This document shows positions 9,630 to 59,165 of a DNA stretch of 64,000 nt, one piece after another; positions within the stretch are counted from its first letter, which is position 1, and each line of letters starts with the position of its first letter. This DNA is from Sphaerodactylus townsendi (lineage: Eukaryota): NCBI RefSeq assembly GCF_021028975.2, contig NC_059433.1:58280001-58344000 (forward strand). The letters run 5' to 3'. The translations under genes were made by a program, and so were the position numbers. Under the pieces are notes generated by a model. The model did not search any database and had not been told where the DNA came from. It saw nothing but the letters and a program-made list of their open reading frames with translations.

Positions 9630-10135
9630 CTGCAATGAGAAGAAATGTTTATGTATTTTGCACATTTTGTTCTGCATGTCAAAATGTTTTTGATTCTACA
9701 TTGTCAAGGAAAGCAGTGAATAATGGTTGAGAAGACAGGACAAATGTATCAACTAGGCCTTAGGGTTGCATTATATACACTGCATTTTTACAGTACATCT
9801 TTATGTAGCATCCTATTGACACAAGTGTTTGACAACAGTTTCTTTTTGCTACATGGTCCAGGTGACACTCAACTGGATACAGTTCTCCACAGAAGGCTCC
9901 TCTTTAGATAAAGATGTTTTTGCTGAGATCCATTGCAAGCTGGTTCTATAAACTAATATTATTCATGTAAACAAATGTACCTTAAAAGTAGTTTTTCTCC
10001 ATCACTGTGTATACAGACAATACTTTAAAATCTTGGCAGGGTGACTTCATGAATTACAAGTTAGCACAATAGTTGTATATGGCCCTCAAGAATTTAGTCT
10101 TCATATCATGTGGCATTAGCCAGAATGGTGTAGCT

Positions 10136-10568
10136 CAGGGGTAGGGAACTTGCGGCTCGAGAGCCGCATGCGGCTCTTCTGCTCTTGCACTGCGGCTCCA
10201 CGAGCTGAGCCGTCTGCTTCATCCTTGCCTGCCCTGCAGGCAGCAGGGCGGGCACACCAACTGCCCGCGGACGGCTGGGCCACGCCACGGGCTTCCCCTC
10301 TCGTCTGCCCCGTTCGAGCGGGGCGGGCGCTTTCCCGGCGGCTGGCAAGGCCAAGCCGCTGGCCCCATCCTTGCCCACCCTGCAGGCAGCAGGGCAGGCG
10401 CATCCATGTGCTTCTCAGAATGAGTGGAATAAAAGGTAAAAAATCCCAATATATACAGTGTTATCTTTATTTTAAATGTCAAAAATTATTTGCGGCTCCA
10501 AGTGTTTTCTTTTCCCGTGGAAAACGGGTCCAAATGGCTCTTTGAGTGAGTAAGGTTCCCTACCCCTG
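10136..10568 (+). mobile_element. Non-autonomous hAT transposon
   Basis: TIR CAGGGGTAGGGAAC; perfect 8-bp TSD GTGTAGCT; related copy in opposite orientation at 52795. Confidence 0.9.
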
Positions 10569-13306: not shown

Positions 13307-14405
13307 AGGGGTCCGGGGCACTGTCCTTTAATGGATTGTCTCGTTCCTGCGGGGGCGGAGTCAGCAAGTGTGGTGTGGGGACAAAGCTTCTCGGAGGTGC
13401 CCACTTCATTGCGGTGTGCCTCAGGGGGCATTGTTGTCCCCATTGTTATTTAACATCTACATGCGACCCCTTGCTCAGTTGGTGCAGAGCTTTGGGCTGA
13501 TCTGCCATCAGTATGCTGATGACACTCAGCTCATTCTGTTGATGGAGGGGGGAGCCGTCGCCGCCCCTGCAGCTCTACAGCATTGTTTGGAGGTGGCCGC
13601 TGGTTGGTTACAACAGAGCAGGTTAAAACTGAATCCATCGAAGACAGAGATCCTTTGGCTTGGTCGGGGGGGGGGAGAGATTGGGAATTTTCAGCCGCCG
13701 GTGTGGGAGGGGGTCACATTGGCGCCGACCTCCTCCGTCCGCAGCCTGGGGGTCCACCTGGATTCATCTCTTTCAATGAAGCCCCAGGTGGCCCATATAA
13801 CCCGGGTTGTGTTTTTCCACCTTCGACAGGCCCGTCGGTTGGCTCCCTTCCTCTCCAATGCTGATCTAGCCACTGTGATCCATGCAACGGTCACCTCCAG
13901 GTTAGACTATTGTAACTCGCTCTACGCGGGCCTTCCCTTGCGTCTGATCCGGAAACTGAAACTGGTCCAACATGCGGCGGCTCGTCTGCTCACAGGGGGC
14001 GCCTTTCGAGAACATATTTCCCCTGTGTTGCGCCACCTGCATTGGTTACCGGTTGAATTCCGAATCATCTTCAAGGTGTGGGTATTGACCTTTAAGGCCT
14101 TACGCGACCTGGGACCCTCGTACCTTCAGGACCGCATTACCCCATATGTCCCAGCTCAACCTCTACGTTCAGCAGAGGCCAATCTACTGGAGATCCCTGG
14201 CCCCTCAATGACGCGGCTGGCCTCCACTCGGGCAAGGGCCTTTACGGCTCTGGCGCAGGCCTGGTGGAACACTCTACCACCAGCTGTTCGGGCCCTGTGG
14301 GACCTTGGAGAGTTCCGCAGGGCCTGCAAAACCAAGTTGTTCCACCGGGCCTTTGGAGAGGCCAGCCACTGATGGTGCCTCTGCCCCCCCCCCCTTGCTT
14401 ATAGG
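13307..14405 (+). mobile_element. 5'-truncated L2-clade LINE with an uninterrupted 334-codon RT C-terminal frame (13368-14372)
   Basis: GVPQG, YADD, LNPSKTE, RLDYCNSL and LHWLPV motifs; possible AAAAGTA TSD (13300-13306, 14406-14412). Confidence 0.9.
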
Positions 14406-20359: not shown

Positions 20360-21370
20360 TTTATCGGGATGTTTGACAACATAAAAGGAAGGAGGGGAGA
20401 GCTGGGTGCGCGCCCTGCAGAGGAAGGGGCAGGTCAGGATAGAAAGACCAAAGCCAGGGGGAGTTCCTTACCCGTTGCTGTCGAACCCCCTCCCCACTTC
20501 TTTGCATTAACCTTTTCTCGGGCACTGGGAGCGCGCGCACACACACACACACACACACCCCTCCCGCGAGCAGCATGTGAAGAGCCGAGGGGCTTTAGGC
20601 AGCCCCGTTCTTAAGCCACGAGAGCCCAGGAGCGATTCCTGCAGCAGAAGGCGCGCAGGGCAGCCCACTTGCTGCGCATTCCAGGCTCGCCCGGGCATTC
20701 GCGCGCGCTCTTTACCTTCCACGCCTGGTCCAGGTGAAAGTCTCGAGCGCGCAAGAAGCGCAACAGGAAGGCGTCCGAGAGTCCGAGCGGCCACGGCTGG
20801 ACGCGCCCTTCCTCGGCTCGGTGCCGCAGTTCAGCAACGGCGGCTCTCACGGCGGGCGCGTCGTCCGGCAGGTCGTTCAGGTTCCCCGGGAGGGCAGGCG
20901 GCTCCTCCGGGCTCATGGCAACGCTGCTGCGCGGGCCGGAGCAGCCAAGGGAAGGATGGGGTGCCCCGCTGGGCTGGTGCGCGGGCAGAGCTGGCTTCTC
21001 CCCGGGCCCAACTTTCGCACTGCCTTACATAACACAAGCAACGAGCGGCGACTGGCCTGACCAGACCAGCCGGCTGCCAAAAGTACCTCGGAACAAAGTC
21101 GGGCCCACACTTCCCCATTGGCAAGTAGGCGGCAAGCCAACGAACAAGCCAACCAACGAGCCCGTCCGCAGCCTCGCCCCACCAGCCTGGACTCCGCCGC
21201 CGGCCCCTCCCCACATTGGGGTCCCCGGAGTGACGTTGCTAGAGCAGCACGGGGGCTGGGGAAGGGGACCCTCCATTGGGCAAGGAGGGGCCACAACGGG
21301 GCAACTCCATTGGCTGTTAAATTCGCGGGCAGCTGCAGAAAAAGATTTTTGACTTCACACTTACGCATCG
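20360..21370. promoter_or_regulatory. CpG island over TTPA exon 1 and promoter
   Basis: GC- and CpG-dense sequence; (CA)n at ~20537-20558. Confidence 0.75.
20716..20916 (-). CDS. TTPA: TTPA exon 1 (MSPEEPP...[22 protein letters not shown])
   Basis: CRAL-TRIO N-terminal [11 protein letters not shown] motif, GCCATG start, AAG|GTAAA donor; five exons total 831 nt = 276 aa + stop. Confidence 0.95.
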
Positions 21371-35600: not shown

Positions 35601-37329
35601 CCATCTTTGGATGATACTCTCCCAGGCACAAGTGGCGAACTAACTTGCATAAAAAGTAACTGAATGTATTTTATTTGGGTATCCTTTTTCAGCTCTGGAT
35701 CCTATACACAGAAGCAATATAATCACACTCAAGCTATTACAATGAAGTTACAATATGATGCTACACTTTTGGTTTTGGAAGATGAAAGTAACTAAGTAGA
35801 GTCTGTCCATTTTGGAGGAAAAACTTCATCTTTATGGTGGTGAGGCTCAAAAGGATGAACTGTCCTGTAAAGTTTCCGAAACGGAAATTTTGGGAACATT
35901 TCAGGACACTCCAGCAGCTTTTCTAAGACAGTGAAGCAAGATAAAGCCTGCAAAAAGCCAAACTAGTTCGTAATTCAGCAACTGCTGAATTAAACTCTCT
36001 TTGATGTAACAGAATATAATTCCTAAGATTTAAACAAGAACATGTTCTATTCTTACCATTTCATCTGGTGCCAAAACTTAACCTAACTGTTTCACTCAAA
36101 TTTATCTGTTTTTTAAAGGTCAGATTTAATATTAGGGTGCTTGTCAGTGCCTCAATGAACAGCAATGCCATGGTTTGCAAAGTTTAAGAATTGTACGGAA
36201 GACGCTTTTGTTCAGCAGAAGACTGAGATGTGCTTAAGATCAACTATCTGTTTTAGAATTAGTAACATAAACTTATTGAAGAGATCATCAGAGTATCATT
36301 CACCATGTGTATCATTTTACTAGGAATATATTGCAGGGTCCAAAGTTTGTTACTGTAAGTCCTGCCTGGGAGAGAAAGGGTAAGGTTTAAACTTTCTTTG
36401 CTGTAAAGCTGCTGAATACACAGAAGATTATTTCACAATAGATTATGGCTATAGGAAGCTGAGTGTTTCTTCCAAATATCATTTGTGTCTTCTACAGTGA
36501 TTCCAACAGAAAACAAATTATCAGAGCATCACATTTGCAATAAAAGTGAGATGAAGCATGGTGATGAAGACTAGTCTCCTTGGAATTCTTACAGATTTAT
36601 AGAAGTAGCAGTTTTTCTGGTTATCTGCTAGCTTTACTTTGTATTACCATGATTATGATTTTCAAGTATTGAACAAACACATGGTCATTTATCCCTTTTA
36701 CAACCCAATCCACAGAGAAAGGGAGTGCTCCAAAGAGGATCTCAGCAGTGCAGGATGCTTAAAGAGAGAAGAAATTTATTAGTGGAGCTGCAAGCAAATG
36801 GGATGTGCTTGCCTTTCAAGTGACATAAGTCACTGGAAATTAAAGGGGGTGTTCCCTGGCTGAAAGCCCTCAAGATGCTGACTAGTCAGCTCTGCACCTG
36901 GGAATGTCCTCACTGGCTCTAATGCAAGCCTCTGCGCCAGAAGAGTGCTGGTGCCTGGGTGCTGCAGTTTACTGGTGCTAGCATATGTGCCTTTGCACCA
37001 GCGTAAATGCCACTTATGCTAGTTTGAGGTGATATCTACACCAGTGCAGGCCCCTTTCTCTATAGATTGCACTGTCAAAGTACCACAGATATTCCCACTG
37101 AAATACTTTCAAAACAGTATAAAAATACCAAGTGGCTGTCATTACTGATCTTCAACATCAGTGGATGTTGATGAATTGTAAAGCCAATAGTGAGCTTCAT
37201 ATAATAGGGCAGGCTCATGGAAAGTTACACTGAGGCAATATTTACAATTTGTAATCATTTATTTGCAGACATATAAGGAAATATTCTTCAGAAGCACGAT
37301 GTGAATTCTTCTGAGAACAACCTGAAACT

Positions 37330-38121
37330 TCATATATATATAGGATGATATTGCTTGCAGCCAAGTTTCTTCCTACATGTTGGACAAGAGTTGGCATTCC
37401 TTAGAGCATCACGGAGACATTCGCTGCAGAAGACATGACCGCATTTTGTTGACACGATGAGTCGTCCACTCTGTACAATTTCCGAATAGATATCCATGCA
37501 AATTGGGCAGCTCACAGTACCGGAACGCCTTGAGCCTGTAACTCCAGCTTCCATCAATTCCAATTCTCTCGACAAAGTACTAGTCAGCACAACATCATTG
37601 TCTCTTGGTTCATCATCATCACTACTTAATACACAGCTGTCAGGAAGATGCTGCCTTAATTTTCGATTCTGCTGTTGCCGCACATGCTCTTCAACCACCA
37701 CCACAGAATCATTGTGTGTAAGGTCAACTACTACTGGTTCTGAAGTTTCACAAGTGAGATCTACTACTTCTTCACAAGCACTTTCTTCAAGGTCAATTGG
37801 CTCCATTTGTGAAGACACTTCTACAGCAGCCATTCGACTTTGCATGCGCGTTTGCCTAGAATTAACAGTTCCTCCGCAACGCTTTTTGGGGACTTTAGAC
37901 TTTCTCATGCTCTCACTGGAAATTATGGAGGCAGCTTCAGCAGTTACCAGAAGTTCACTACCGGTGGCAGGAGAGAAAGAGGCCACAGTGGAAGTGGATG
38001 GCGAGGAGAAAGAGATGGTGGCTGAGGAAGCAGACCCAGCAGACTTGATTTGCACGCTGTTAGCTAGACTTTTGTTCTTCCTGCGCTTAGCTCCAGTGCG
38101 TTTGGCATCAGTCGGACTCAT
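37330..38121 (-). CDS. RNF4: RNF4-like SUMO-targeted E3 ubiquitin ligase, single-exon CDS (probable retrogene), 263 aa
   Basis: Four SIMs (PIDLE, VVDLT, VVVDLT, VVVV), SCVLSSDDDE acidic patch, C3HC4 RING (CPIC...CGHVFCSEC...CPTC) and terminal YHPIYI; no introns, stops or frameshifts. Probably a paralogue rather than the multi-exon RNF4 orthologue. Confidence 0.92.
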   Translation of the reverse strand: MSPTDAKRTGAKRRKNKSLANSVQIKSAGSASSATISFSSPSTSTVASFSPATGSELLVTAEAASIISSESMRKSKVPKKRCGGTVNSRQTRMQSRMAAVEVSSQMEPIDLEESACEEVVDLTCETSEPVVVDLTHNDSVVVVEEHVRQQQNRKLRQHLPDSCVLSSDDDEPRDNDVVLTSTLSRELELMEAGVTGSRRSGTVSCPICMDIYSEIVQSGRLIVSTKCGHVFCSECLRDALRNANSCPTCRKKLGCKQYHPIYI

Positions 38122-38649
38122 GGTTCACAGACAGGCCAAGCTCCCAAATGAACATCAAAGGATACGCTAAGAGCAAGAGCAAAATGTGAGAAACTCGGTC
38201 ATAAGGGCCTCTGTGCAGATTCATTCGCCCGAGTTGTACGTCACAAACACATAACTCCACCCAAACTTCCTGCTAATACGCACAAAGCCACCGAGCCGGA
38301 TAGCCCAGGGCTCACCTACCCACATAAAAGCACGTTCTTCAGGTCCTAGGTTGTTGTTTTTTAAAGGAGCAAAACTCTTCTTTTCTAGCTCTCTTTTTGA
38401 CTTTATCTCTTGCTTCTAAAGTAAGAGACCTGAAGTAAAGCAAGCCTGCCCTGGGACAATCGGAAACCAACGTGTCTCCATTTGGTATAATGGCAACCGG
38501 ACAGGAAGCCACCCAGGCAATTCCATCCACCTTCTTTACACAATGCACCAGAGCAGCCTCTATCCTAGTCCTGTTCCTGACCCACACCCATTACTCCACA
38601 CAATCCCTTACTAGCACCGCAGAGCCTCCTATAAACCAAGAACTACACT

Positions 38650-39197
38650 TACCTTCCACTCCTACCCTCTAGCAGCTTCCCACAGAAGTACGAAGAAAAT
38701 TTAACGTCAGTCCACCCTACCTTTAGTAGGCAGGACCGCGCATGCGCCTCTCCAGCACCCGGCGCTGTTTGAATCGCCTGTTATCGGCAGTCTCCAACTG
38801 GAGAACATACGGGTAACCTAAGGAGACTCTGGCGCATGCGCAAATATCTTTCTCTCCTTCACGTGACGTGAGGCGGAGACGGAAAGGGAAAGGTCGCCTG
38901 CGACGTCGTCAGTGGAGGAGGGGGGAAGAGCGGAAGGTCAGGGAGCCGCGGAGCGGAAGTGGGAGCCGGAGCGCGTCCGCCATTGTGGGAAAGCGGAGCC
39001 CGGAGCTGGGGAGGGGAGCCGTGCGGTGTCCAGCGGGTCGCATTCGGTGGCACCGGCCAGGCCAGGAGTGTCTGGGCTGCGGAGACAATCAAGCGGAGGC
39101 GGCGAAGGCGGCGGCGGGGACGGCGACCTGCGAAAGATAAGGCGGAGGAGGAGGCCCAAGCGGAGCTGGGTGAGGGGATCGCGGTTCCCCGTGAAGA
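38650..39197. promoter_or_regulatory. Bidirectional CpG-island promoter shared by YTHDF3 (+) and the RNF4-like gene (-)
   Basis: NRF1 palindromes GCGCATGCGC at 38738-38747 and 38832-38841; E-box/CRE TCACGTGACGTGA at 38859-38871; ETS/GABP CGGAAGTG at 38954; YY1-like CCGCCATTGT at 38977. Confidence 0.8.
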
Positions 39198-39221
39198 ATG
39201 TCAGCCACCAGCGTCGACCAG
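39198..39221 (+). CDS. YTHDF3: YTHDF3 exon 1 (MSATSVDQ)
   Basis: Matches the YTHDF3 N-terminus; CAG|GT donor. Confidence 0.93.
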
Positions 39222-40478
39222 GTATCGCCTGAGCCTTTCCCGCGCGGCGCCCCTTCGCCCCTCTCCTCCTCCTGCCACTCGGCCCCTGGACATAGCGGGG
39301 ATCCGTGCCCGCTACATCCGAGGCCGTGCGACTCCTCCCCGTTCCCAGGACCGCCCCCTCCGCGAGCCTGGAGGCCGCTCAGCCCCGGCCTGGGGCCTTC
39401 CCGCGGCGGCCGTGTTGCTGGCTTTCCCAAGCAGGGCCCTCTCCTGCAAACGGCCACGGCTTGGCTTCCTTTTTGTTATTGTTTTCCCTTCCCTGTTGCT
39501 CCCGCTTCGCCCTGTGCCGCATCCAGTCCTCGGATTCCATCTCTAATTTCTACCCCTAAACGGGGCCTTCGGCTGGAGATTTTCCTGTCTTAATCGTCGC
39601 CACTTTCCTTCTTTATTTCTGCTACGGTTCCCCGCTCTCCTTTGCAGCCATTTTTCGGCCTCTCCCTCTTCGGTAACATATTTTCAAACCGTTTTTTATT
39701 GCCCAAATTTGTATGCGTCTTGTTTTTCATGCCACTGAGTTATTATTTTCCTCCCCCCCCCCCCCATCCTTTGTCGGTCTTTAACTGCTGAAACGTTTGA
39801 AGTTTTAGGTTTGAAGTAATCGTGGTTCATACGGAAAAAATCATTTATAAAGAGCAACCCAAATCTGGTGTGAAAGAAAGTAAAATGTCATGCCAATGGG
39901 AGAGAGGATAACTTGTTTTAGAAAATTCTGAATTTTCAGCCTGTTAACTAATATTAAGAAAAACGATTTTGACATATTGTCCCTGTGTACTTCTTGAGAC
40001 TGTTATTTGGCATTGTAGAAGGCCTGGTAACTTTCTCATTTGGCTAAGTGGCAGGACTTGGAATATAGAGTACTGTTGCAACTGTGTTAAGCACTGTCTG
40101 TTTTTGCAAACTGCATGTTATGACTGTTGGGGTGTTTTTTTTTAGTTGGGCTTTTAGTCGTGAGAATATGTATTGTATTGTGAGGCATTCAGCTTATGTA
40201 TAAATACAAACAGTATTTTTTGTAATTATATCCCCTAAGACTTCACAAACATGAAACATGTGATTTATATTTCTGTGTGGTAAATGTATATCTAAGTGGC
40301 TTCTAACTTTTTTGGTAAGCAGCACTGTGAGCAACACTTGCTAACTTATTGTGGTTGAGATATATAACAAGCCATTTTACCATCATTTTGGTTTTATTTA
40401 GAATTATGGTTATAATGTGAATATATTTGATATATATCAAAACTTTTAATGCTTGGTTTTTCTATTTTTTATTACTAG

Positions 40479-45450: not shown

Positions 45451-46100
45451 TTATTTATTTATTTGTTTGTTTGTTTGTTTGTTTGTTTTATTAAATTTCT
45501 ATACCGCCCTTCCCCGAAGGGCTCAGGGTGGTGTCCATCATTCACATAACAGTTAAAATCCATTTCACCCCAATCCCAGTTAAAACCATATACAAATTAT
45601 AAAATTCAAAGTCCCGATGGCGATTAAAATTATTTCCCCTTTCCTGCCCCCCCCCCCCACAGGAAGCCAGATTTTTCCACAGAAGTGAGATGTTATCCCA
45701 GTTGGCCAAATGCCTGGCGGAACAGGTCCGTTTTACAGGCCCTGCGGAAACTCTGTATGTCCCGCAGGGCCCTGATCTCACTTGGGAGCCTGTTCCACCA
45801 CTTGTATGTCCCGCAGGGCCCTGATCTCACTTGGGAGCCTGTTCCATCGCCCTGCTAGGCCCCTCCGCTCCTCGGAGGCGGACCTCCTGGTGATCCCTGG
45901 CCCCAAAGTGATCCGGCTGGCCTCTACAAGGGCCAGGGCAGCCCTGGCCCTTGTAGAGGCCAGCCGGATCACTTTGGGGCCAGGGATCACCAGGAGGTCC
46001 GCCTCCGAGGAGCGGAGGGGCCTAGCAGGGCGATATAGGGAGAGACGGTCCCATAGGTATGCTGGTCCAAGGCCGCGAATAGCTTTAAAGGTCAAAACCA
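45451..46100 (-). mobile_element. Rearranged L2 3' fragment with an internal 44-bp tandem duplication and a 94-bp-arm perfect inverted repeat
   Basis: TFKAIRGLGPAYL..PLRSSEADLLVIPGP homologous to the 13368 ORF; (TTTA/TTTG)n tail. Confidence 0.85.
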
Positions 46101-46689
46101 GAGTTGGTGTTTTCTGACCTTTTCTTGGAATCCTGCTCCTTGTTCCAAAGTTCTGGTGTAAAGATCAGGAATCCCTTGTGGATAGAATGCAGAGTATTAT
46201 TGTGATGGAGTCTCACTTATCATTTGCCCTGATTTCCTCTTTGCTTCATCCTCCCTCCCTCACTGTAGTGCATTTTGTTTTTGAGGGTCTCCTAACTATC
46301 AGAAAGGACAGTAGAGGCAGAAAGCAGGGGCAAATTAGCTTCACTAATCCAAAATGTCACATGAAATATTTCTTTTAGAAATTGGTGAAAGTTAGTGATT
46401 TTTCCTTAGCTAATTTTTATTCTCCCATATCTTTACAACAAAAATATTCCTCACAGCAAAAATCTAACTTCTAACCCAGCCTAATTTTCCCCAATTTAAT
46501 TGAGTACTAGAGATGATATAGAAAGCAATCCGTTAAGAAATGAATTCATCCATAATCATTGAAAGGTGGTAAAATTAAGTTTGCCTATAAATAAGCAAGA
46601 ACTTCATACACATTTTTATGTCCTATAACAAAGTATTCCGATACAATATAAGATCCAGCCAGCATTGATAAGATCCAGTCAGATTTTTT

Positions 46690-49658: not shown

Positions 49659-50127
49659 AAACCACCAGCTTCACAAGGAATACAAGTTTTTTACTATTGG
49701 CCATGATGCATACAACAAAGGCATGCTTCTAAGGAGAATATTTACATACTAGATTGATTGTCTCAATATCATTTATCATTTTTTAAGCTAGGGGAAGGGA
49801 AGCCAGGAGAAACAACAGGAGAATGCTTATAGCACTATAGGCTTTTAAAACATTTAATTCCAATAATTTAATTGAAAAGGTGTGTTCCTGTTTAAAGACA
49901 GTGGTCTTTATTAGATCAGCTGCCCCCTTAAGTGTTATTGAATATGTGCTTTTTTAGATGCAATTGTGTTTTTGTTTCAGCTCTTTAGTCTTTTAAGACA
50001 GCTAACCTTCAGCAAATAACTTAAATGTTTTTCTCTGATATTTGAAATACAATGCTATAAGCAAATTAAGACAGTAGATGAAGTACCAAATTTGATTCTT
50101 CTGATACTGATTTTTGTTCTACTGCAG

Positions 50128-51711
50128 AATAATAGCTATCCACCAATGTCAGACCCATACATGCCTAGTTATTATGCACCATCCATTGGATTTCCATACT
50201 CTCTGGGTGAAGCAGCTTGGTCTACAGCAGGAGATCCTCCAATGCCATACTTGACAACTTATGGACAGATGAGCAATGGTGAACACCACTACATCCCTGA
50301 CGGTGTGTTTAGTCAACCTGGGGCTTTAGGAAATACCCCTCCATTCCTTGGTCAACACGGATTTAATTTTTTTCCTGGGAATGCAGATTTCTCTACATGG
50401 GGGACAAGTGGATCTCAGGGGCAATCAACCCAAAGCTCTGCTTATAGCAGCAGCTATGGCTACCCTCCTAGCTCTCTTGGCAGAGCTATAGCCGATGGAC
50501 AGGCTGGATTTGGCAATGATACCTTAAGCAAGGTGCCTGGTATTAGCAGCATTGAGCAAGGCATGACTGGACTGAAAATTGGTGGCGATATGACAGTTGC
50601 TGTAACAAAAACAGTGGGTTCAGCTCTGAGCAGTACAGGAATGACGAGCATTGCAGCCAACAGTGTGCCTGCAGTTAGCAGTTCAGCACCGAAACCAACC
50701 TCTTGGGCTGCCATCGCTAGGAAACCTGCTAAGCCTCAGCCAAAACTTAAGCCTAAAGGTAATGTGGGAATTGGGGGTCCTGCTGTCCCACCCCCCCCTA
50801 TAAAACACAACATGAATATTGGAACTTGGGATGACAAAGGGTCTGTAGTCAAAGCTCCCCCCACCCAACCAGTACTGCCTCCTCAGACTATAATTCAGCA
50901 GCCTCAGCCATTAATTCAGCCCCCACCAATGGTGCAAAGCCAACTGCCTCAGCAGCAGCCGCAGCCACAGCAGCAACAAGGACCTCAGCAGCAGGCCCAG
51001 CCGCATCAGCTGCAGCAACAGCAGCTGCAAAATCGCTGGGTGGCTCCTCGCAATAGGGGTGTGGGCTTCAATCAGAGCAATGGAGCTGGCAATGAAAACT
51101 ATGGTATAGGTGTTATACCAGTTAGCTCTTCACCTTCTGGTGTAGAAGTGCACCCAGTACTGGAGAAACTAAAGGCCATAAATAATTATAATCCCAAAGA
51201 CTTTGACTGGAACCTGAAGAATGGTCGTGTGTTTATAATCAAAAGCTATTCAGAGGACGATATACATCGTTCCATTAAGTATTCTATCTGGTGTAGTACT
51301 GAACATGGTAATAAGCGCTTGGATGCCGCGTACCGTTCGCTGAATGGAAAAGGCCCACTCTATTTACTTTTCAGCGTGAATGGCAGTGGACACTTCTGTG
51401 GAGTGGCTGAGATGAAGTCTGTGGTGGACTACAACGCATATGCTGGTGTCTGGTCTCAGGATAAATGGAAGGGGAAGTTTGATGTTAAATGGATCTTTGT
51501 TAAAGACGTTCCGAACAACCAGCTGCGGCACATTCGTTTGGAAAACAATGACAACAAACCGGTTACCAATTCGAGGGACACTCAAGAAGTACNNNNNNNN
51601 NNNNNNNNNNNNNNNNNNNNNNNNNNNNNNNNNNNNNNNNNNNNNNNNNNNNNNNNNNNNNNNNNNNNNNNNNNNNNNNNNNNNNNNNNNNNNNNNNNNN
51701 NNNNNNNNNNN
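50128..51711 (+). CDS. YTHDF3: YTHDF3 exon 4 (P/Q/G low-complexity region and YTH m6A-binding domain); the 3' end lies in the N run and is inferred
   Basis: CTGCAG acceptor; [25 protein letters not shown]...[10 protein letters not shown] aromatic-cage tryptophans. Sequence is visible to 51592; the end assumes ~40 further conserved codons. Confidence 0.95.
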
Positions 51712-51732
51712 NNNNNNNNNNNNNNNNNNNNN
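51593..51732. other. 140-nt N run (gap or mask)
   Basis: Ns in sequence. Confidence 1.
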
Positions 51733-52794
51733 CTGTTTTTTATGTATTAAGTGCTTAATATTTGAAAATTATATCTCATTTCCAGTAACAGTAATGATCC
51801 CTCATTTCCAGTCACCATTTCCAGTAACAAATCTTAGAAATCCTCAGGTAATGGGAGGACTCTTACAAACAGAGCAGAAAGGTCTTGCTGGTCTTTCCTT
51901 CAGCCTTCCCTCACCCTAAAGCACCTACTGAAAAGCTGGGGACCATGTGTTTTGTGGGCAGAATGCATGTGGGGAGGGGGGAGGTTCATGATGCAGGAGG
52001 ACTTGAAAGTGGTAGAACTTTGCCCTTCTATCAGAGTTCATTCTTCTGCTGGCAGAGGGGGAATTCTGCTCAGTTTTCCTATCCTCACTGCAGCCCCAAC
52101 AAGGCTTCTACAGTTGCCCGAAGAATCTGAAGTTGTATGGAAAGGTGGCATAAAAATGTTTTAAATAAACACCAGAGTCAATTTTTTTGATCCTCATCAG
52201 GCTGTGGTGGATGGGTAGGTGGGAAATGGACATGAGAGCTTTTCTGTCCAGTTCATAGAATCTAACTTTTAAAAAAGAATAAAAACAACTTTTCCTACCA
52301 AACTAGAGGTTAAGTGCGAGACAATGCACACTTCAGCTGGATACATTAATCACTTTAAAGTTTCTGCCTTCAGTATGATACTTAATTTTAATTCTGCATT
52401 AAAAATGTGTTTAATACAAAGTTGAAATTATTGCATTTTGGAATCTCAGTTGTCTGATTGTGTTTAAATTAATTTTATGACTTGTTTTCTTTTGTCGTGT
52501 TGCAATACTATACAGTGTTTTTAAAAGATAAAAAGTATTTCAGTTATTGCAATGGAGGGCTTTCTGCATCTTTGGAGGAAAAAGTTGCTATTAAACAAAC
52601 ATCAAAGTTTTGAAAATTTTGACAATATTTTGAAAACCAGTTTTTCTGGTATTACAATTTTAACTGTATCGTGAACAACTAATTTGGAATTTTGTTATAA
52701 AAGACTTTTTGTTTTTCTTCTATTACAACTGAATCCATCCCACAATTTTGTGAAAAACTTCTTTTTGGGTGGGGGGGGAGATGTGATTTTAATG

Positions 52795-53344
52795 CAGGGG
52801 TAGGGAACCTTAATCACTCAAAGAGCCATTTGGACCCGTTTTCCACAGGAAAAGAAAACACTTGGAGCTGCAAATAATTTTTGACATTTAAAATAAAGAT
52901 AACACTGTATATATTGGGGTTTTTTACCTTTTACTCCGCTCATTCTGAGAAGCGCATGGATGCGTCCGCCCTGCTGCCTGCAGGGCAGACAAAGATGAAG
53001 CCGGTGGTTTGGCCTTGCTGGCCGTCGGGAAAGCGCCCGCCCCGCTCCAACGGGACGGGCGAGAGGGGAAGCCCGTGGCATGGCCCAGCCAGCTGCGAGC
53101 AATTGGTGCGCTCGCCCTGCAGGGCAAGGATGTAGCCGGTGGCTCAGCCTCACCGGCCGCCGGGAAAGCACCCGCCCCGCTCGAACAGGGCGGGCAAGAG
53201 GGGAAGCCCGTGGTGAGGCCCAGCCGGCCGTGGGCAATTGGTGCGCTTGCCCTGCTGCCTGCAGGGTGGGCAAGGATGGGGCTGGCAGCTCGGCTCGTGG
53301 AGCTGCAGTGCAAGGGCAGAAGAGCCGCAGGTTCCCTACCCCTG
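52795..53344 (-). mobile_element. Non-autonomous hAT transposon, longer variant of the 10136 copy with an internal duplication
   Basis: TIR CAGGGGTAGGGAACCT; TSD TTTTAATG. Confidence 0.9.
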
Positions 53345-55656
53345 TTTTAATGGGTGATACAGCCTCTCTGCTAGTGGAAATAGAACAGCTACTTAAACTC
53401 TACAAAGTAGTTTTTCACAAAATTGTGGGATAGATTCTAACAACCTGAAATGGAGAACCACCACTTTACGATGATGGATTCAACCCATTATGTCACAAAA
53501 GCAGCAGTTGTAATAGAAAGTAGAGTTCTCTGATATTCAAGATATGGAATAAGTAGAAATATTGATTTACAGCCATTCATTCAACAGGTTATCACAAGAG
53601 AGATTTTCTTACGTGTAATAATAGTGTTTTGTGGCAACTTACTGACCCCTGAAAGAGAACTTCAGCAGATTCTCAGACTCTACATTGATCCTGTACAATA
53701 AAAGCAAACAAGAATACTGCCCAGCAAACAAGCTCATTTTTTTCCACTGCTCCTCTTGAAGTAATCCTCTTTTACCTCATGCTCCTTCAGACTGTCTCCA
53801 AACCAATATCTTTATAAATCTGTTAAACCGAGACTAGCTATGTCTGGGACTCTGACCTTAAGAGTTATAATAGGTAATTTATATATATGTTAAAGACAGA
53901 GATGGCTCACGTATTCCATGGGTAATAATGCTGAAGACTCGTCCTAGCTCACAGTATGCCCTATCTTTCTATGCTGGGATGATATGGAAATTAGTGAATC
54001 TAAACAGGATAATATCTGAATCTTTTAATTTCTTGTTCAGACTCTAACTAGCTGCTGGTAGTTTCCTTTCTAGGAGGGGCAACTCACAGTGTAAGTGCTT
54101 GGACTATTCTTAATGCATTTGAAAAGAAAATAATAAAATACTGTTTTTGTGTGTGAAATCCATGGTATGCAGCATAATCATGGAATTTTTGTTTGCAGGC
54201 AGAATTTTAAAGAGACTTACAAATAAAAAATTGTATTTAATCAAGAGGTTAGTACTTTTTCCTGCATCCTGGGAATAAATTGGTGAAAATGAGAAGCACC
54301 CTTAAGCATGCAAATCTGCATTTAAAATCACACTTTTTTATTTAAACATTTTGTCTTCTGTTCATTTAACAGTAGTCATTAAAATGTATATTCTTACAAA
54401 TGTATATTCTATCAAAAGAAAGATAATAACATGGGTTTGACAGAAGTACAGTGCTTGAAACATGTCCAGGTGAATGATTGACAGTATGTTGACATACCCC
54501 TTACATTCTTAATTCTTGTAATCTGCTGTACTATTCTTATAGATGGAAGAGGTATATGTGAATTTGGGGATATTTTCTCTTCCTTAAGAAGAATGATATA
54601 ATTCTTGATTACTTAATTGGTGTTGATATATTCAGGAGTAAAGCTCTCATTTGCCCTCCTAGGGTTTATCTTCCACTGGAGAGCTTTTTGGTTTGTAGCC
54701 TCCAGAAGGCTAGTGGAAAGGCATTCATGGATGAGGGTTTTCCCCACGCTCCCCTTCTCTCAGCAGCCCCTTTTGGCTCACGGAAAACGGATGTTTAGGA
54801 ACCCACGTGGGCAGAAAGTCATACAACTTGATGGGCTGCTGTGAGGAGAGAGAAACTGGTGCTAAAGTCTCTCTGCTCTTGCCAGTGAAAAGTGCGACTG
54901 AGTAAGAGTCAGGAGGGATGATTTCACCAAACATCTAATTGCTTCAAGCCTTTGGTCCTATGTATCTTTTTGCATATCAACCAATATACAATGGTGTATA
55001 GCGGATAAGTACCTATGTACCTATTTGCCAAAAGTGAACTACCAGCATCAGATGCTTTTTGGAGAAGGACTCTGTGGAGAAATCTCTGCTTTTCTGAACC
55101 CCTTGTATGATCCTGCTGCCACTCTGAGGATCCATAGGAAGTGGAAACCAGAAGACTCTGGGACTTTCACTTATCCTTTTATGCAGTACTGTGCAGGATG
55201 GAATCAGGTTGGAAGATATACTAATGACATAATATATTCAGCGAGTCTTAAATATCTTGTCTGACCTCTAGAGTGTCTGAAGAAGACTTAATACTTGCAG
55301 AATGTTAATATCAATAATCTTAATATTAATAGGGATGACTATGTGGGCAGAAGCAGATACAGATAATAGCTAGAAGTGAGTGCCTGGGTATTGATTAAAA
55401 GAGAGTTACAGAGTATGCAGTTATTGCCCTGTGTCATTAGACTGAGATTTACCTTGAACAACTAGTTAGATTTGGCTGGCTGGTCCTTGGGTACAAATGC
55501 AGCAACTGGCTGCACAGCAGTCACAAAACCCTTTTGACCAAGCTGTCATTCCTTTTTTCACTTTCCATAGAAGGCCTTCAGACTGCAGATGTGCATGTGC
55601 AGCTTTTTGAACTGACTTAGCTTTGCAGTTTTGGAAGAAACAAAAAGCTGGCATGC

Positions 55657-58993: not shown

Positions 58994-59165
58994 NNNNNNN
59001 NNNNNNNNNNNNNNNNNNNNNNNNNNNNNNNNNNNNNNNNNNNNNNNNNNNNNNNNNNNNNNNNNNNNNNNNNNNNNNNNNNNNNNNNNNNNNNNNNNNN
59101 NNNNNNNNNNNNNNNNNNNNNNNNNNNNNNNNNNNNNNNNNNNNNNNNNNNNNNNNNNNNNNNNN
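58994..59165. other. 172-nt N run (gap or mask)
   Basis: Ns in sequence. Confidence 1.

What the first reader, a model, noticed from the sequence alone, without database searches (positions are those of the whole stretch)
37330..38121. Intact intronless RNF4-like retrogene inserted between TTPA and YTHDF3
Seen: an uninterrupted 263-codon ORF with all four SIMs, all eight RING zinc ligands, the CPICM and CPTCR E2-contact residues, the RKK basic patch and the terminal HPIYI dimerisation/ubiquitin-contact tail. Known: canonical RNF4 is multi-exon and lies in a different neighbourhood, and the mammalian GGH-TTPA-YTHDF3 block has no RNF4. Inference: this is a lineage-specific retrocopy kept under purifying selection, giving a second SUMO-targeted ubiquitin ligase. 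Linker regions have diverged while motifs are intact and no poly(A)/TSD scar is visible, which suggests an old, domesticated copy.
Basis: partly seen in the sequence, partly recalled or inferred. Interest (0 to 1): 0.85.

Follow-up and report, generated by a model that had tools for sequence, protein, structure and literature searches.

The report
Squamate RNF4 is a relocated retrogene
The intronless RNF4 gene beside YTHDF3 in this gecko is real, expressed and under purifying selection, but it looks like the only RNF4 of lizards and snakes: an old mRNA-derived copy that replaced the original multi-exon gene.

Summary
A 263-codon ORF lies at 37330-38121 (-) with four SIMs, an RNF4-type RING (PDB 4ap4, E 2e-66) and the HPIYI tail. 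It sits between TTPA exon 1 and YTHDF3 exon 1.

The gene is not lineage-specific and probably not a second ligase.
- The same single-exon gene lies head-to-head with YTHDF3 in six other squamates, geckos to python. It is annotated RNF4 or RNF4-like in about 40 squamate species.
- All squamate RNF4 proteins form one clade sister to tuatara. No parent-type squamate protein turned up.
- Turtle and guinea fowl keep a 14-17 kb multi-exon RNF4, directly after CFAP99 in the fowl. After CFAP99 in a monitor lizard and a snake there is no RNF4, only a convergent ubiquitin/zf-AN1 gene.
- So this is most likely an orphan retrogene: fixed before crown squamates, parent lost.

RNA reads cover the ORF and show a 5'UTR exon at the edge of the YTHDF3 CpG island, spliced with GT..AG 45 nt before the ATG. 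That acceptor is conserved in seven squamates. Pairwise dN/dS is 0.15-0.29 overall and 0.02-0.07 in the RING. A 70-95-residue Ser-rich N-terminal segment is found only in squamates and is also constrained (0.20-0.56).

This is a good example of a known kind, of moderate interest. Whole-genome absence of the parent in this gecko was not tested.

The parts
37330..38121 (-). Complete RNF4 coding sequence in one exon (263 aa plus stop).
   Evidence: ORF list. 100% match to a database protein, and 59-82% full-length identity to squamate proteins annotated RNF4. RNA reads show no indel in it.
37888..38121 (-). Squamate-specific N-terminal segment, aa 1-78. It starts MSPTD, carries a KRRKNK basic patch and a Ser-rich PSTS stretch. 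In this gecko it is 8-20 aa shorter than in most squamates.
   Evidence: Aligned in all squamates and absent in tuatara, turtle, crocodile, bird, mammal and frog. A profile built from it hits only squamates. Pairwise dN/dS 0.20-0.56. Predicted as coil at low confidence.
37687..37800 (-). SIM1-SIM4 cluster, aa 108-145 (poly-SUMO binding region).
   Evidence: Invariant columns I109, L111, V120-T123, V132-T135, V141. Match to the RNF4 SIM peptide of 2mp2, E 5e-6. dN/dS 0.07-0.32.
37330..37509 (-). RING finger (C205-R250), C-terminal tail to I263 and the stop codon.
   Evidence: Pfam zf-C3HC4_2, E 4.5e-12. PDB 4ap4, 4ppe, 3ng2 at E 1e-35 to 2e-66. dN/dS 0.02-0.07. Window-only substitutions G211I and Q234E.
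38122..38166 (-). 5'UTR part of exon 2. It holds two in-frame TGA codons and a 15-codon uORF that starts at 38155 and overlaps the main ATG.
   Evidence: Sequence. Exon start fixed by spliced reads. The acceptor is conserved in seven squamates.
38167..38720 (-). 5'UTR intron, GT..AG on the minus strand. An alternative, shorter intron uses a donor near 38653-38656.
   Evidence: 27 spliced reads join 38166 to 38721, and 12 join 38168 to about 38656. Read depth in the intron is 1 or less.
38721..38795 (-). Non-coding exon 1. The upstream end is approximate, taken from read depth.
   Evidence: Depth about 22 in X5 in bin 38700-38795, falling to about 2 further upstream. The donor is AAG|GTAGGG.
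38600..39700 (.). CpG island and bidirectional promoter shared with YTHDF3. Two GCGCATGCGC palindromes (NRF1-type by my recall) start at about 38738 and 38832. The YTHDF3 ATG is at 39198 (+).
   Evidence: GC up to 0.73 and CpG observed/expected 0.8-1.15. YTHDF3 5'UTR reads rise from about 38900. Palindromes located.
37258..37263 (-). AATAAA poly(A) signal 67 nt after the stop codon. The main 3' end follows shortly after it.
   Evidence: Motif position. Depth falls from about 49 to about 9 below 37260 in X5. Weaker coverage continues to 36300, so longer 3'UTR forms may exist.

Best explanation
This is the gecko's RNF4 gene in the form shared by all sampled lizards and snakes: an orphan retrogene.

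Origin (inferred):
- A processed RNF4 mRNA was reverse-transcribed and inserted between TTPA and YTHDF3. This happened after the split from tuatara and before crown squamates diverged.
- The copy landed about 1 kb from the YTHDF3 CpG-island promoter and is transcribed divergently from it.
- It gained a non-coding first exon and a 5'UTR intron.
- The original multi-exon gene beside CFAP99 was then lost, so the copy carries the ancestral function.

Function (inferred from family knowledge, not assayed):
- Four tandem SIMs bind poly-SUMO chains on substrates.
- This promotes RING dimerisation through the C-terminal YHPIYI tail.
- The dimer activates the E2~ubiquitin conjugate, so the SUMOylated protein is ubiquitinated.

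Shown here: the intronless ORF, the synteny across squamates, expression and splicing, purifying selection, absence of RNF4 at the ancestral site in two squamates, and a conserved squamate-only N-terminal segment of 70-95 residues.
For: - Family: the RING matches RNF4 structures at E 2e-66 and the SIM region matches the 2mp2 peptide.
- Retroposition: turtle RNF4 spans 16.9 kb with at least five coding introns. The window ORF is continuous across the four that align unambiguously, at about aa 115, 143, 198 and 214. Guinea-fowl RNF4 is a 13.8 kb multi-exon gene directly after CFAP99.
- Shared by squamates: a single-exon RNF4 lies head-to-head with a YTH gene in Eublepharis, Podarcis, Python, Heteronotia, Sceloporus and Hemicordylus. 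A CRAL_TRIO gene lies downstream in two of them.
- Single origin: 19 named and 4 unnamed squamate sequences form one clade (SH-aLRT 98, stem length 0.19) sister to tuatara.
- Parent missing, by annotation: no parent-type squamate protein is among the 120 best hits, which reach down to mammals and frogs. Retro-type entries cover about 40 species.
- Parent missing, by locus: in Varanus the order is FYVE gene, CFAP99, then 1.8 kb on a convergent ubiquitin/zf-AN1 gene. In Pituophis the same gene follows CFAP99 after 5.1 kb. tblastn finds no RNF4 exon in either locus, but 4-6 exons in the turtle and fowl controls.
- Function retained: dN/dS is 0.15-0.29 overall and 0.02-0.07 in the RING. Seven of eight fixed differences to the RNA source are synonymous.
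- Expression: 1350, 274 and 101 RNA reads were laid in three runs, with depth up to about 225. There are 39 spliced reads with GT..AG ends.
- Structure conserved: the 5'UTR acceptor is conserved in seven squamates.
- Precedent: orphan retrogenes that use CpG-island or bidirectional promoters are described in PMC4772013 and PMC3548309.
Against: - No whole-genome search for a parental RNF4 could be run in this gecko or any squamate.
- The ancestral site was inspected in only two species, both Toxicofera, and only 10 kb past CFAP99. If a rearrangement broke between CFAP99 and RNF4, a parent could survive elsewhere unannotated.
- No poly(A) tail or target-site duplication remains, so retroposition rests on simultaneous intron loss plus relocation.
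- The RNA runs come from an individual or close relative about 1% diverged in the CDS and coded as a different organism. The libraries are unstranded, so the strand is inferred from the splice sites.
- The RNF4 : YTHDF3 5'UTR depth ratio varies from about 0.3 to about 8 among the three runs. Simple co-regulation is therefore not shown.
- Biochemical activity is untested. This species carries K93M, G211I and Q234E at positions that are invariant or nearly invariant in the other aligned vertebrates.
Confidence: 0.85

Rival explanations
1. One reading: a retrocopy that coexists with a retained multi-exon parental RNF4, giving squamates (or geckos) two SUMO-targeted ubiquitin ligases.
For: NCBI names the gene 'RNF4-like' in some species (Python, Elgaria, Rhineura, Pantherophis, Candoia), which could hint at another copy. 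Extra copies do arise: Hemicordylus has a second one. No whole-genome search was possible.
Against: No parent-type squamate protein appears in the search or the tree. The Hemicordylus extra copy carries the squamate N-terminal segment and is itself intronless, so it is a daughter of the retrogene and not the parent. The site after CFAP99 is empty of RNF4 in Varanus and Pituophis. Most RefSeq annotations name this gene RNF4 outright.
Confidence: 0.08
2. The ancestral gene itself moved next to YTHDF3 by a DNA-level rearrangement and lost all coding introns afterwards. No RNA intermediate was involved.
For: No poly(A) tail or target-site duplication is left. The ancestral CFAP99 neighbourhood is rearranged in squamates. 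The gene does have an intron, in its 5'UTR.
Against: All coding introns are absent in every squamate sampled, with no intermediate form. None of the ancestral neighbours moved with the gene. The 5'UTR intron has no counterpart at the turtle start-codon exon. A gained 5'UTR intron is a typical secondary acquisition of retrogenes (PMC4772013).
Confidence: 0.05
3. A transcribed but non-functional retrocopy whose open frame survives by chance.
For: This gecko has three substitutions at otherwise invariant sites and a longer terminal branch than its nearest relative (0.076 against 0.015).
Against: The frame is intact in every squamate sampled across roughly 200 My. RING dN/dS is 0.02-0.07. Seven of eight recent differences are synonymous. 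Spliced expression is strong.
Confidence: 0.02

Closest known systems
Vertebrate RNF4 (SNURF), the SUMO-targeted ubiquitin ligase (PDB 4ap4, 2mp2)
   Same: Four tandem SIMs, a C3HC4 RING with all eight ligands, the CPICM methionine and CPTCR arginine, and the YHPIYI tail. The core is 63-70% identical to tuatara, turtle, bird and mammal RNF4.
   Different: The coding sequence is a single exon beside YTHDF3 rather than multi-exon beside CFAP99. A squamate-only N-terminal segment of 70-95 aa is present. The arginine-rich stretch between SIM4 and the acidic tract is weaker (VRQQQNRKLR here). This species also has K93M, G211I and Q234E.
Orphan retrogenes that replaced their parents, for example mammalian RNF113A, MARS2 and TRMT12 (PMC4772013; PMC3548309)
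   Same: A processed copy is retained under purifying selection while the parent is lost. The promoter is a recruited CpG island, and 5'UTR exon-intron structure was gained.
   Different: The clade is Squamata and not mammals. The gene is a core SUMO/ubiquitin pathway enzyme. The copy also acquired a conserved new coding segment. My searches of the held paper library found no description of it.
Retrocopies driven by a neighbour's bidirectional promoter (for example HTR7P1/HEBP1 in PMC4772013)
   Same: Head-to-head with the neighbour, with start codons about 1.08 kb apart. The first exon lies at the edge of the neighbour's CpG island.
   Different: In Podarcis, Sceloporus and Python the two start codons are 4.7-9.4 kb apart, presumably through growth of the 5'UTR intron. 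Co-expression with YTHDF3 is not evident in the three runs.

Membership tests
RNF4 / SUMO-targeted ubiquitin ligase | Cluster of four SUMO-interaction motifs in a disordered N-terminal half | tested here: met
   I109-E112, V119-L122, V130-L134 and V140-V143 lie in invariant alignment columns. Residues 117-138 match the 2mp2 SIM peptide at E 5e-6. The four-SIM definition is taken from PMC12751084.
RNF4 / SUMO-targeted ubiquitin ligase | C-terminal C3HC4 RING with eight zinc ligands and the E2-contact Met and Arg | tested here: met
   Pfam RING families. Residue-by-residue alignment to 4ap4 and 4ppe with all ligands kept, M209 and R250 included.
RNF4 / SUMO-targeted ubiquitin ligase | C-terminal aromatic tail (YHPIYI) used for RING dimerisation and donor-ubiquitin contact | tested here: met
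   Y258 to I263 are invariant in 26 sequences. The role of the tail comes from knowledge of the 4ap4 structure and was not tested.
RNF4 / SUMO-targeted ubiquitin ligase | Poly-SUMO-dependent E3 activity | not testable with these tools
   Needs an in vitro ubiquitination assay. G211I and Q234E make it worth doing for this species.
Retrogene (processed-mRNA copy) | Lacks the parental introns | tested here: met
   tblastn of the ORF on the turtle locus splits into five exons, while the window ORF is continuous. The coding sequence is a single exon in six other squamates.
Retrogene (processed-mRNA copy) | Lies away from the parental locus | tested here: met
   Outgroup RNF4 follows CFAP99 and has no YTH or CRAL_TRIO neighbour. 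The squamate gene lies between YTHDF3 and TTPA.
Retrogene (processed-mRNA copy) | Poly(A) tract and target-site duplications | tested here: not met
   None is seen in the flanks. This is expected for an insertion older than crown squamates, so it weakens the claim without excluding it.
Orphan retrogene | Parental gene absent from the same lineage | tested here: inconclusive
   Absent at the ancestral site in Varanus and Pituophis. Absent from all squamate protein sets searched. No whole-genome search was run in this gecko.
Orphan retrogene | Purifying selection and expression | tested here: met
   dN/dS 0.15-0.29. Spliced RNA reads in three runs.
Bidirectional-promoter recruitment | Head-to-head within about 2 kb of another gene, with the transcript starting in the shared CpG island | tested here: met
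   The two ATGs are 1077 bp apart in the window, and 957-1140 bp apart in two other geckos and Hemicordylus. Exon 1 is at 38721-38795 and YTHDF3 5'UTR reads rise from about 38900. CpG observed/expected is about 1.
Bidirectional-promoter recruitment | Co-expression with the partner gene | tested here: inconclusive
   Only three runs of unknown tissue. The RNF4: YTHDF3 5'UTR depth ratio ranges from about 8 (X5) to about 0.3 (X7).

The most novel reading that the evidence does not exclude
The retrogene is more than a like-for-like replacement in two possible ways.

- The squamate-only N-terminal segment of 70-95 residues (basic KRRKNK patch plus Ser-rich stretch, constrained for roughly 200 My) may be an in-frame insertion or duplication just after the ancestral first ten codons. 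It could give RNF4 a new regulatory or targeting module.
- The parent may have been lost through the same chromosomal rearrangement that now places a ZFAND4-like gene against CFAP99. That would have made an essential genome-stability gene depend on a retrocopy in the ancestor of all lizards and snakes.
Probability: 0.3. Interest if true: 0.55.

Novelty: new member of a known kind. Interest (0 to 1): 0.42.

Why it matters
RNF4 is the main vertebrate ligase that links SUMO chains to ubiquitination, in DNA-damage repair and in turnover of PML and DNA-protein crosslinks.

If the whole squamate radiation runs this pathway from a retrocopy, three things follow:
- It is a rare, clean, clade-wide case of parental replacement outside mammals. 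The retrocopy has a borrowed promoter, a gained 5'UTR intron and a new conserved protein segment.
- It offers a natural experiment on how a recruited promoter reproduces housekeeping expression.
- It offers a defined extra segment to test for function.

There is also a practical point for annotation. 'RNF4' and 'RNF4-like' in squamate genomes are the same single-exon gene and should be treated as the functional orthologue. Synteny-based orthology calls will fail for it.

Tried and rejected
- Source of the N-terminal segment. tblastn and blastn of the segment and 5'UTR against the turtle RNF4 locus gave only noise. A profile of the segment hit no non-squamate protein. Pfam found nothing in it.
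- Structure. The AlphaFold model from 26 sequences was poor (mean pLDDT 49). It shows RING-like elements and coil elsewhere, and I did not use it for fold searches.
- Literature. Searches for an RNF4 retrogene in squamates found nothing relevant. PMC7240998 turned out to mention RNF43.
- Earlier notes of this scan held nothing on RNF4 elsewhere in the genome, nor on FAM193A, ZFYVE28 or CFAP99.
- P0023 (green turtle) is not on record in the contig index, so I used Emys.
- The two guinea-fowl CFAP99 exons I translated match no CFAP99 Pfam model and are absent from the turtle flank. The last exon still reached squamate CFAP99 proteins.
I redid the step by coordinates.
- Human entry. P0120 was among the 120 hits. 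It went through one bulk profile scan and was otherwise left out of the alignment and tree. I handled no contig that I took for human.
- The N runs at 51593-51732 and 58994-59165 were left as they are. No YTHDF3 sequence was sent to any search.

Full report
**Observation**

- Pfam sees only RING families at residues 204-252.
- Residues 196-263 align to the RNF4 RING of PDB 4ap4 (E 2e-66), 4ppe and 3ng2. Residues 117-138 align to the RNF4 SIM peptide of 2mp2 (E 5e-6).
- In an alignment with 25 vertebrate RNF4 proteins, the four SIM cores, the eight zinc ligands, CPICM, CPTCR-KK and YHPIYI all fall in invariant or near-invariant columns.
- YTHDF3 exon 1 begins at 39198 (+) and its last large exon is at 50092-51750 (+). 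A TTPA-type first exon lies at 20611-20916 (-).

**The gene is not special to this lineage**

A search of 5.8 billion proteins returned full-length matches of 59-82% identity only from squamates. They come from geckos (Heteronotia, Euleptes, Paroedura, Eublepharis), skinks, cordylids, lacertids, teiids, an amphisbaenian, anguimorphs, iguanians and snakes, and all are annotated RNF4 or RNF4-like. Cluster members bring the count to about 40 species, including venom-gland transcriptome entries. The window comes from a gecko, with Euleptes as nearest relative in the tree.

In Eublepharis, Podarcis, Python, Heteronotia, Sceloporus and Hemicordylus the coding sequence is a single exon, head-to-head with a YTH-domain gene. 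In Podarcis and Python a CRAL_TRIO gene follows it. This is the arrangement seen in the window.

**The outgroups have the canonical gene**

Emys RNF4 spans 16.9 kb. tblastn splits both the turtle protein and the window ORF into the same five exon blocks, with junctions at about window residues 115, 143, 198 and 214. A further intron lies just after the start codon. Numida RNF4 spans 13.8 kb and lies directly after CFAP99; I recall the same order in human. The tuatara protein model carries a spurious insert exactly at the RING exon junction, which points to an intron there.

Loss of all coding introns together with a new location is the signature of retroposition. No poly(A) tract or target-site duplication survives.

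**Second gene or sole gene?**

Three lines of evidence favour a sole gene.
1. The 120 best hits reach down to mammals and frogs (E 1e-60). Among them every squamate entry is of the retro type. The two short models (Podarcis muralis, Varanus) are N-terminally truncated versions of the same gene.
2. In a maximum-likelihood tree, 19 named and 4 unnamed Logan-derived squamate sequences form one clade (SH-aLRT 98) on a long stem (0.19), sister to tuatara (83). The other unnamed hits fall with birds or mammals.
3. I reached the ancestral site directly. The last CFAP99 exon of Numida found CFAP99 of Pituophis and Varanus.
   - In Varanus the order is a FYVE gene (ZFYVE28-like), then CFAP99, then 1.8 kb further a convergent 710-aa ubiquitin + zf-AN1 gene. 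I call it ZFAND4-like from its domains and length.
   - In Pituophis the same gene follows CFAP99 after 5.1 kb.
   - tblastn with turtle, tuatara, bird and squamate RNF4 finds nothing in these loci (E > 0.4). It finds 4-6 exons in the turtle and fowl controls.

The parent is therefore gone from its ancestral place in a snake and a monitor, and no trace of it appears in any squamate protein set. A whole-genome search, in particular of this gecko, could not be run. That is the main remaining gap.

**Function is maintained**

Pairwise Nei-Gojobori dN/dS among seven orthologues:

| Region | dN/dS |
|---|---|
| Whole ORF | 0.15-0.29 |
| Core | 0.09-0.22 |
| RING | 0.02-0.07 |
| N-terminal segment | 0.20-0.56 |

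Three RNA-seq runs were laid on the locus. They come from an individual or close relative about 1% diverged in the coding sequence and coded as a different organism.
- They cover the ORF at depth up to about 225 in X5, with no indel in the ORF.
- Of the eight fixed coding differences, seven are synonymous.

**Gene structure and promoter**

- Twenty-seven reads join 38166 to 38721, with GT..AG on the minus strand. Twelve more use an alternative donor near 38656.
- The gene therefore has a non-coding exon 1 (about 38721-38795), a 554-nt 5'UTR intron, and a second exon that starts 45 nt before the ATG.
- That stretch holds two in-frame stops, so 38121 is the first usable ATG, in an ACC ATG A context. 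A 15-codon uORF starts at 38155.
- Exon 1 lies at the edge of a CpG island (38.6-39.7 kb, GC up to 0.73, CpG observed/expected about 1). YTHDF3 5'UTR reads rise from about 38.9 kb in the other direction.
- The polypyrimidine-AG acceptor 40-48 nt before the ATG is conserved in all seven squamates examined.
- The distance to the YTHDF3 ATG is about 1 kb in geckos and Hemicordylus, and 4.7-9.4 kb in Podarcis, Sceloporus and Python.
- An AATAAA at 37258-37263 precedes the main drop in coverage.

Head-to-head CpG promoters, gained 5'UTR introns and replacement of parents are all documented for mammalian retrogenes (PMC4772013, PMC3548309).

RNF4 depth relative to the YTHDF3 5'UTR is about 8 in X5 and about 0.3-0.5 in X6 and X7. 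Expression is therefore tissue-dependent and not simply tied to YTHDF3. The tissues are not known to me.

**The N-terminal segment**

All squamate proteins begin MSPTD..KR.G.KRRKNK. A Ser-rich stretch follows, and only then the sequence that aligns with the canonical N-terminus (KKRCGGTINSRQ). A profile of this segment matches only squamates.

The first ten codons resemble the canonical start across the turtle's first exon junction. Local alignment scores lie 2.5-5.5 SD above shuffles in five of the seven species and about 1-2 SD in Podarcis and Python. The K-R-C-G motif occurs both at residues 7-10 and at about 80-83 in several species.

This suggests an in-frame insertion or duplication after the ancestral start rather than recruitment of upstream sequence. 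The evidence is weak, and I give it about even odds.

**Peculiarities of this gecko**

It has K93M, G211I and Q234E at positions invariant in 17 other squamates and invariant or nearly so in the outgroups. Its terminal branch is longer than that of Euleptes (0.076 against 0.015). The RNA reads show no difference at these codons, so they are not assembly errors. Whether they affect activity is unknown.

**Verdict**

The feature is real and functional. It is best described as the squamate RNF4 orthologue in retrogene form, an orphan retrogene with a recruited bidirectional CpG promoter, and not as an extra ligase. It is a new member of a known kind. The gene is already annotated in many genomes, but I found no paper describing its origin. 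Interest is moderate.

Noticed in passing
L005:10001-10915 (Hemicordylus capensis, another chromosome): A second intronless RNF4 copy (304 aa, 55% identical to the window protein) lies inside the range of a Ribosomal_L21p (MRPL21-like) gene. It carries the squamate N-terminal segment, so it is a retrocopy of the retrogene. dN/dS against the main copy is 0.43 overall and 0.11 in the RING.
   Followed up: partly
window 38092-38121 and about 37870-37887 (-): The first ten codons resemble the canonical RNF4 start, and the K-R-(C)-G motif recurs about 70 residues later in several squamates. The 'extension' may be an in-frame insertion or duplication after codon 10. Statistical support is weak.
   Followed up: partly
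window 37843-37845, 37489-37491, 37420-37422 (-): K93M, G211I and Q234E occur only in this species, at sites invariant in 17 other squamates and invariant or nearly so in seven outgroup sequences. The RNA reads agree with the assembly at these codons.
   Followed up: partly
L011:21244-31243 and L010:33169-43168: In Varanus and Pituophis, CFAP99 is followed after 1.8-5.1 kb by a convergent 708-710-aa ubiquitin (+ zf-AN1) gene, ZFAND4-like, where birds have RNF4. This is either a deletion or a rearrangement breakpoint at the lost parent.
   Followed up: partly
window 38108-38155 (-): A 15-codon upstream ORF in exon 2 overlaps the main start codon in another frame.
   Followed up: no
window 36300-37250: Low RNA coverage continues about 1 kb past the AATAAA signal and is relatively stronger in run X6. 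It could be a longer 3'UTR isoform or a separate transcript.
   Followed up: no
window 13368-14372 (+), 45778-46117: A 334-aa ORF resembles the C-terminal part of a LINE reverse transcriptase. A palindromic fragment at 45.8-46.1 kb shares its tail motif on both strands.
   Followed up: no
window 10106-10545 and 52818-53433: Two copies of one repeat, in opposite orientation, give near-identical spurious ORFs ending in the same peptide. This is probably a dispersed transposable element.
   Followed up: no
window 51593-51732 and 58994-59165: Runs of N. The first lies inside the YTH-domain part of the YTHDF3 last exon.
   Followed up: no
P0076 (Sphenodon), alignment A1 columns about 340-352: The tuatara RNF4 model carries an odd 11-residue replacement exactly at the RING exon junction. 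It is probably intron read-through in the annotation.
   Followed up: no
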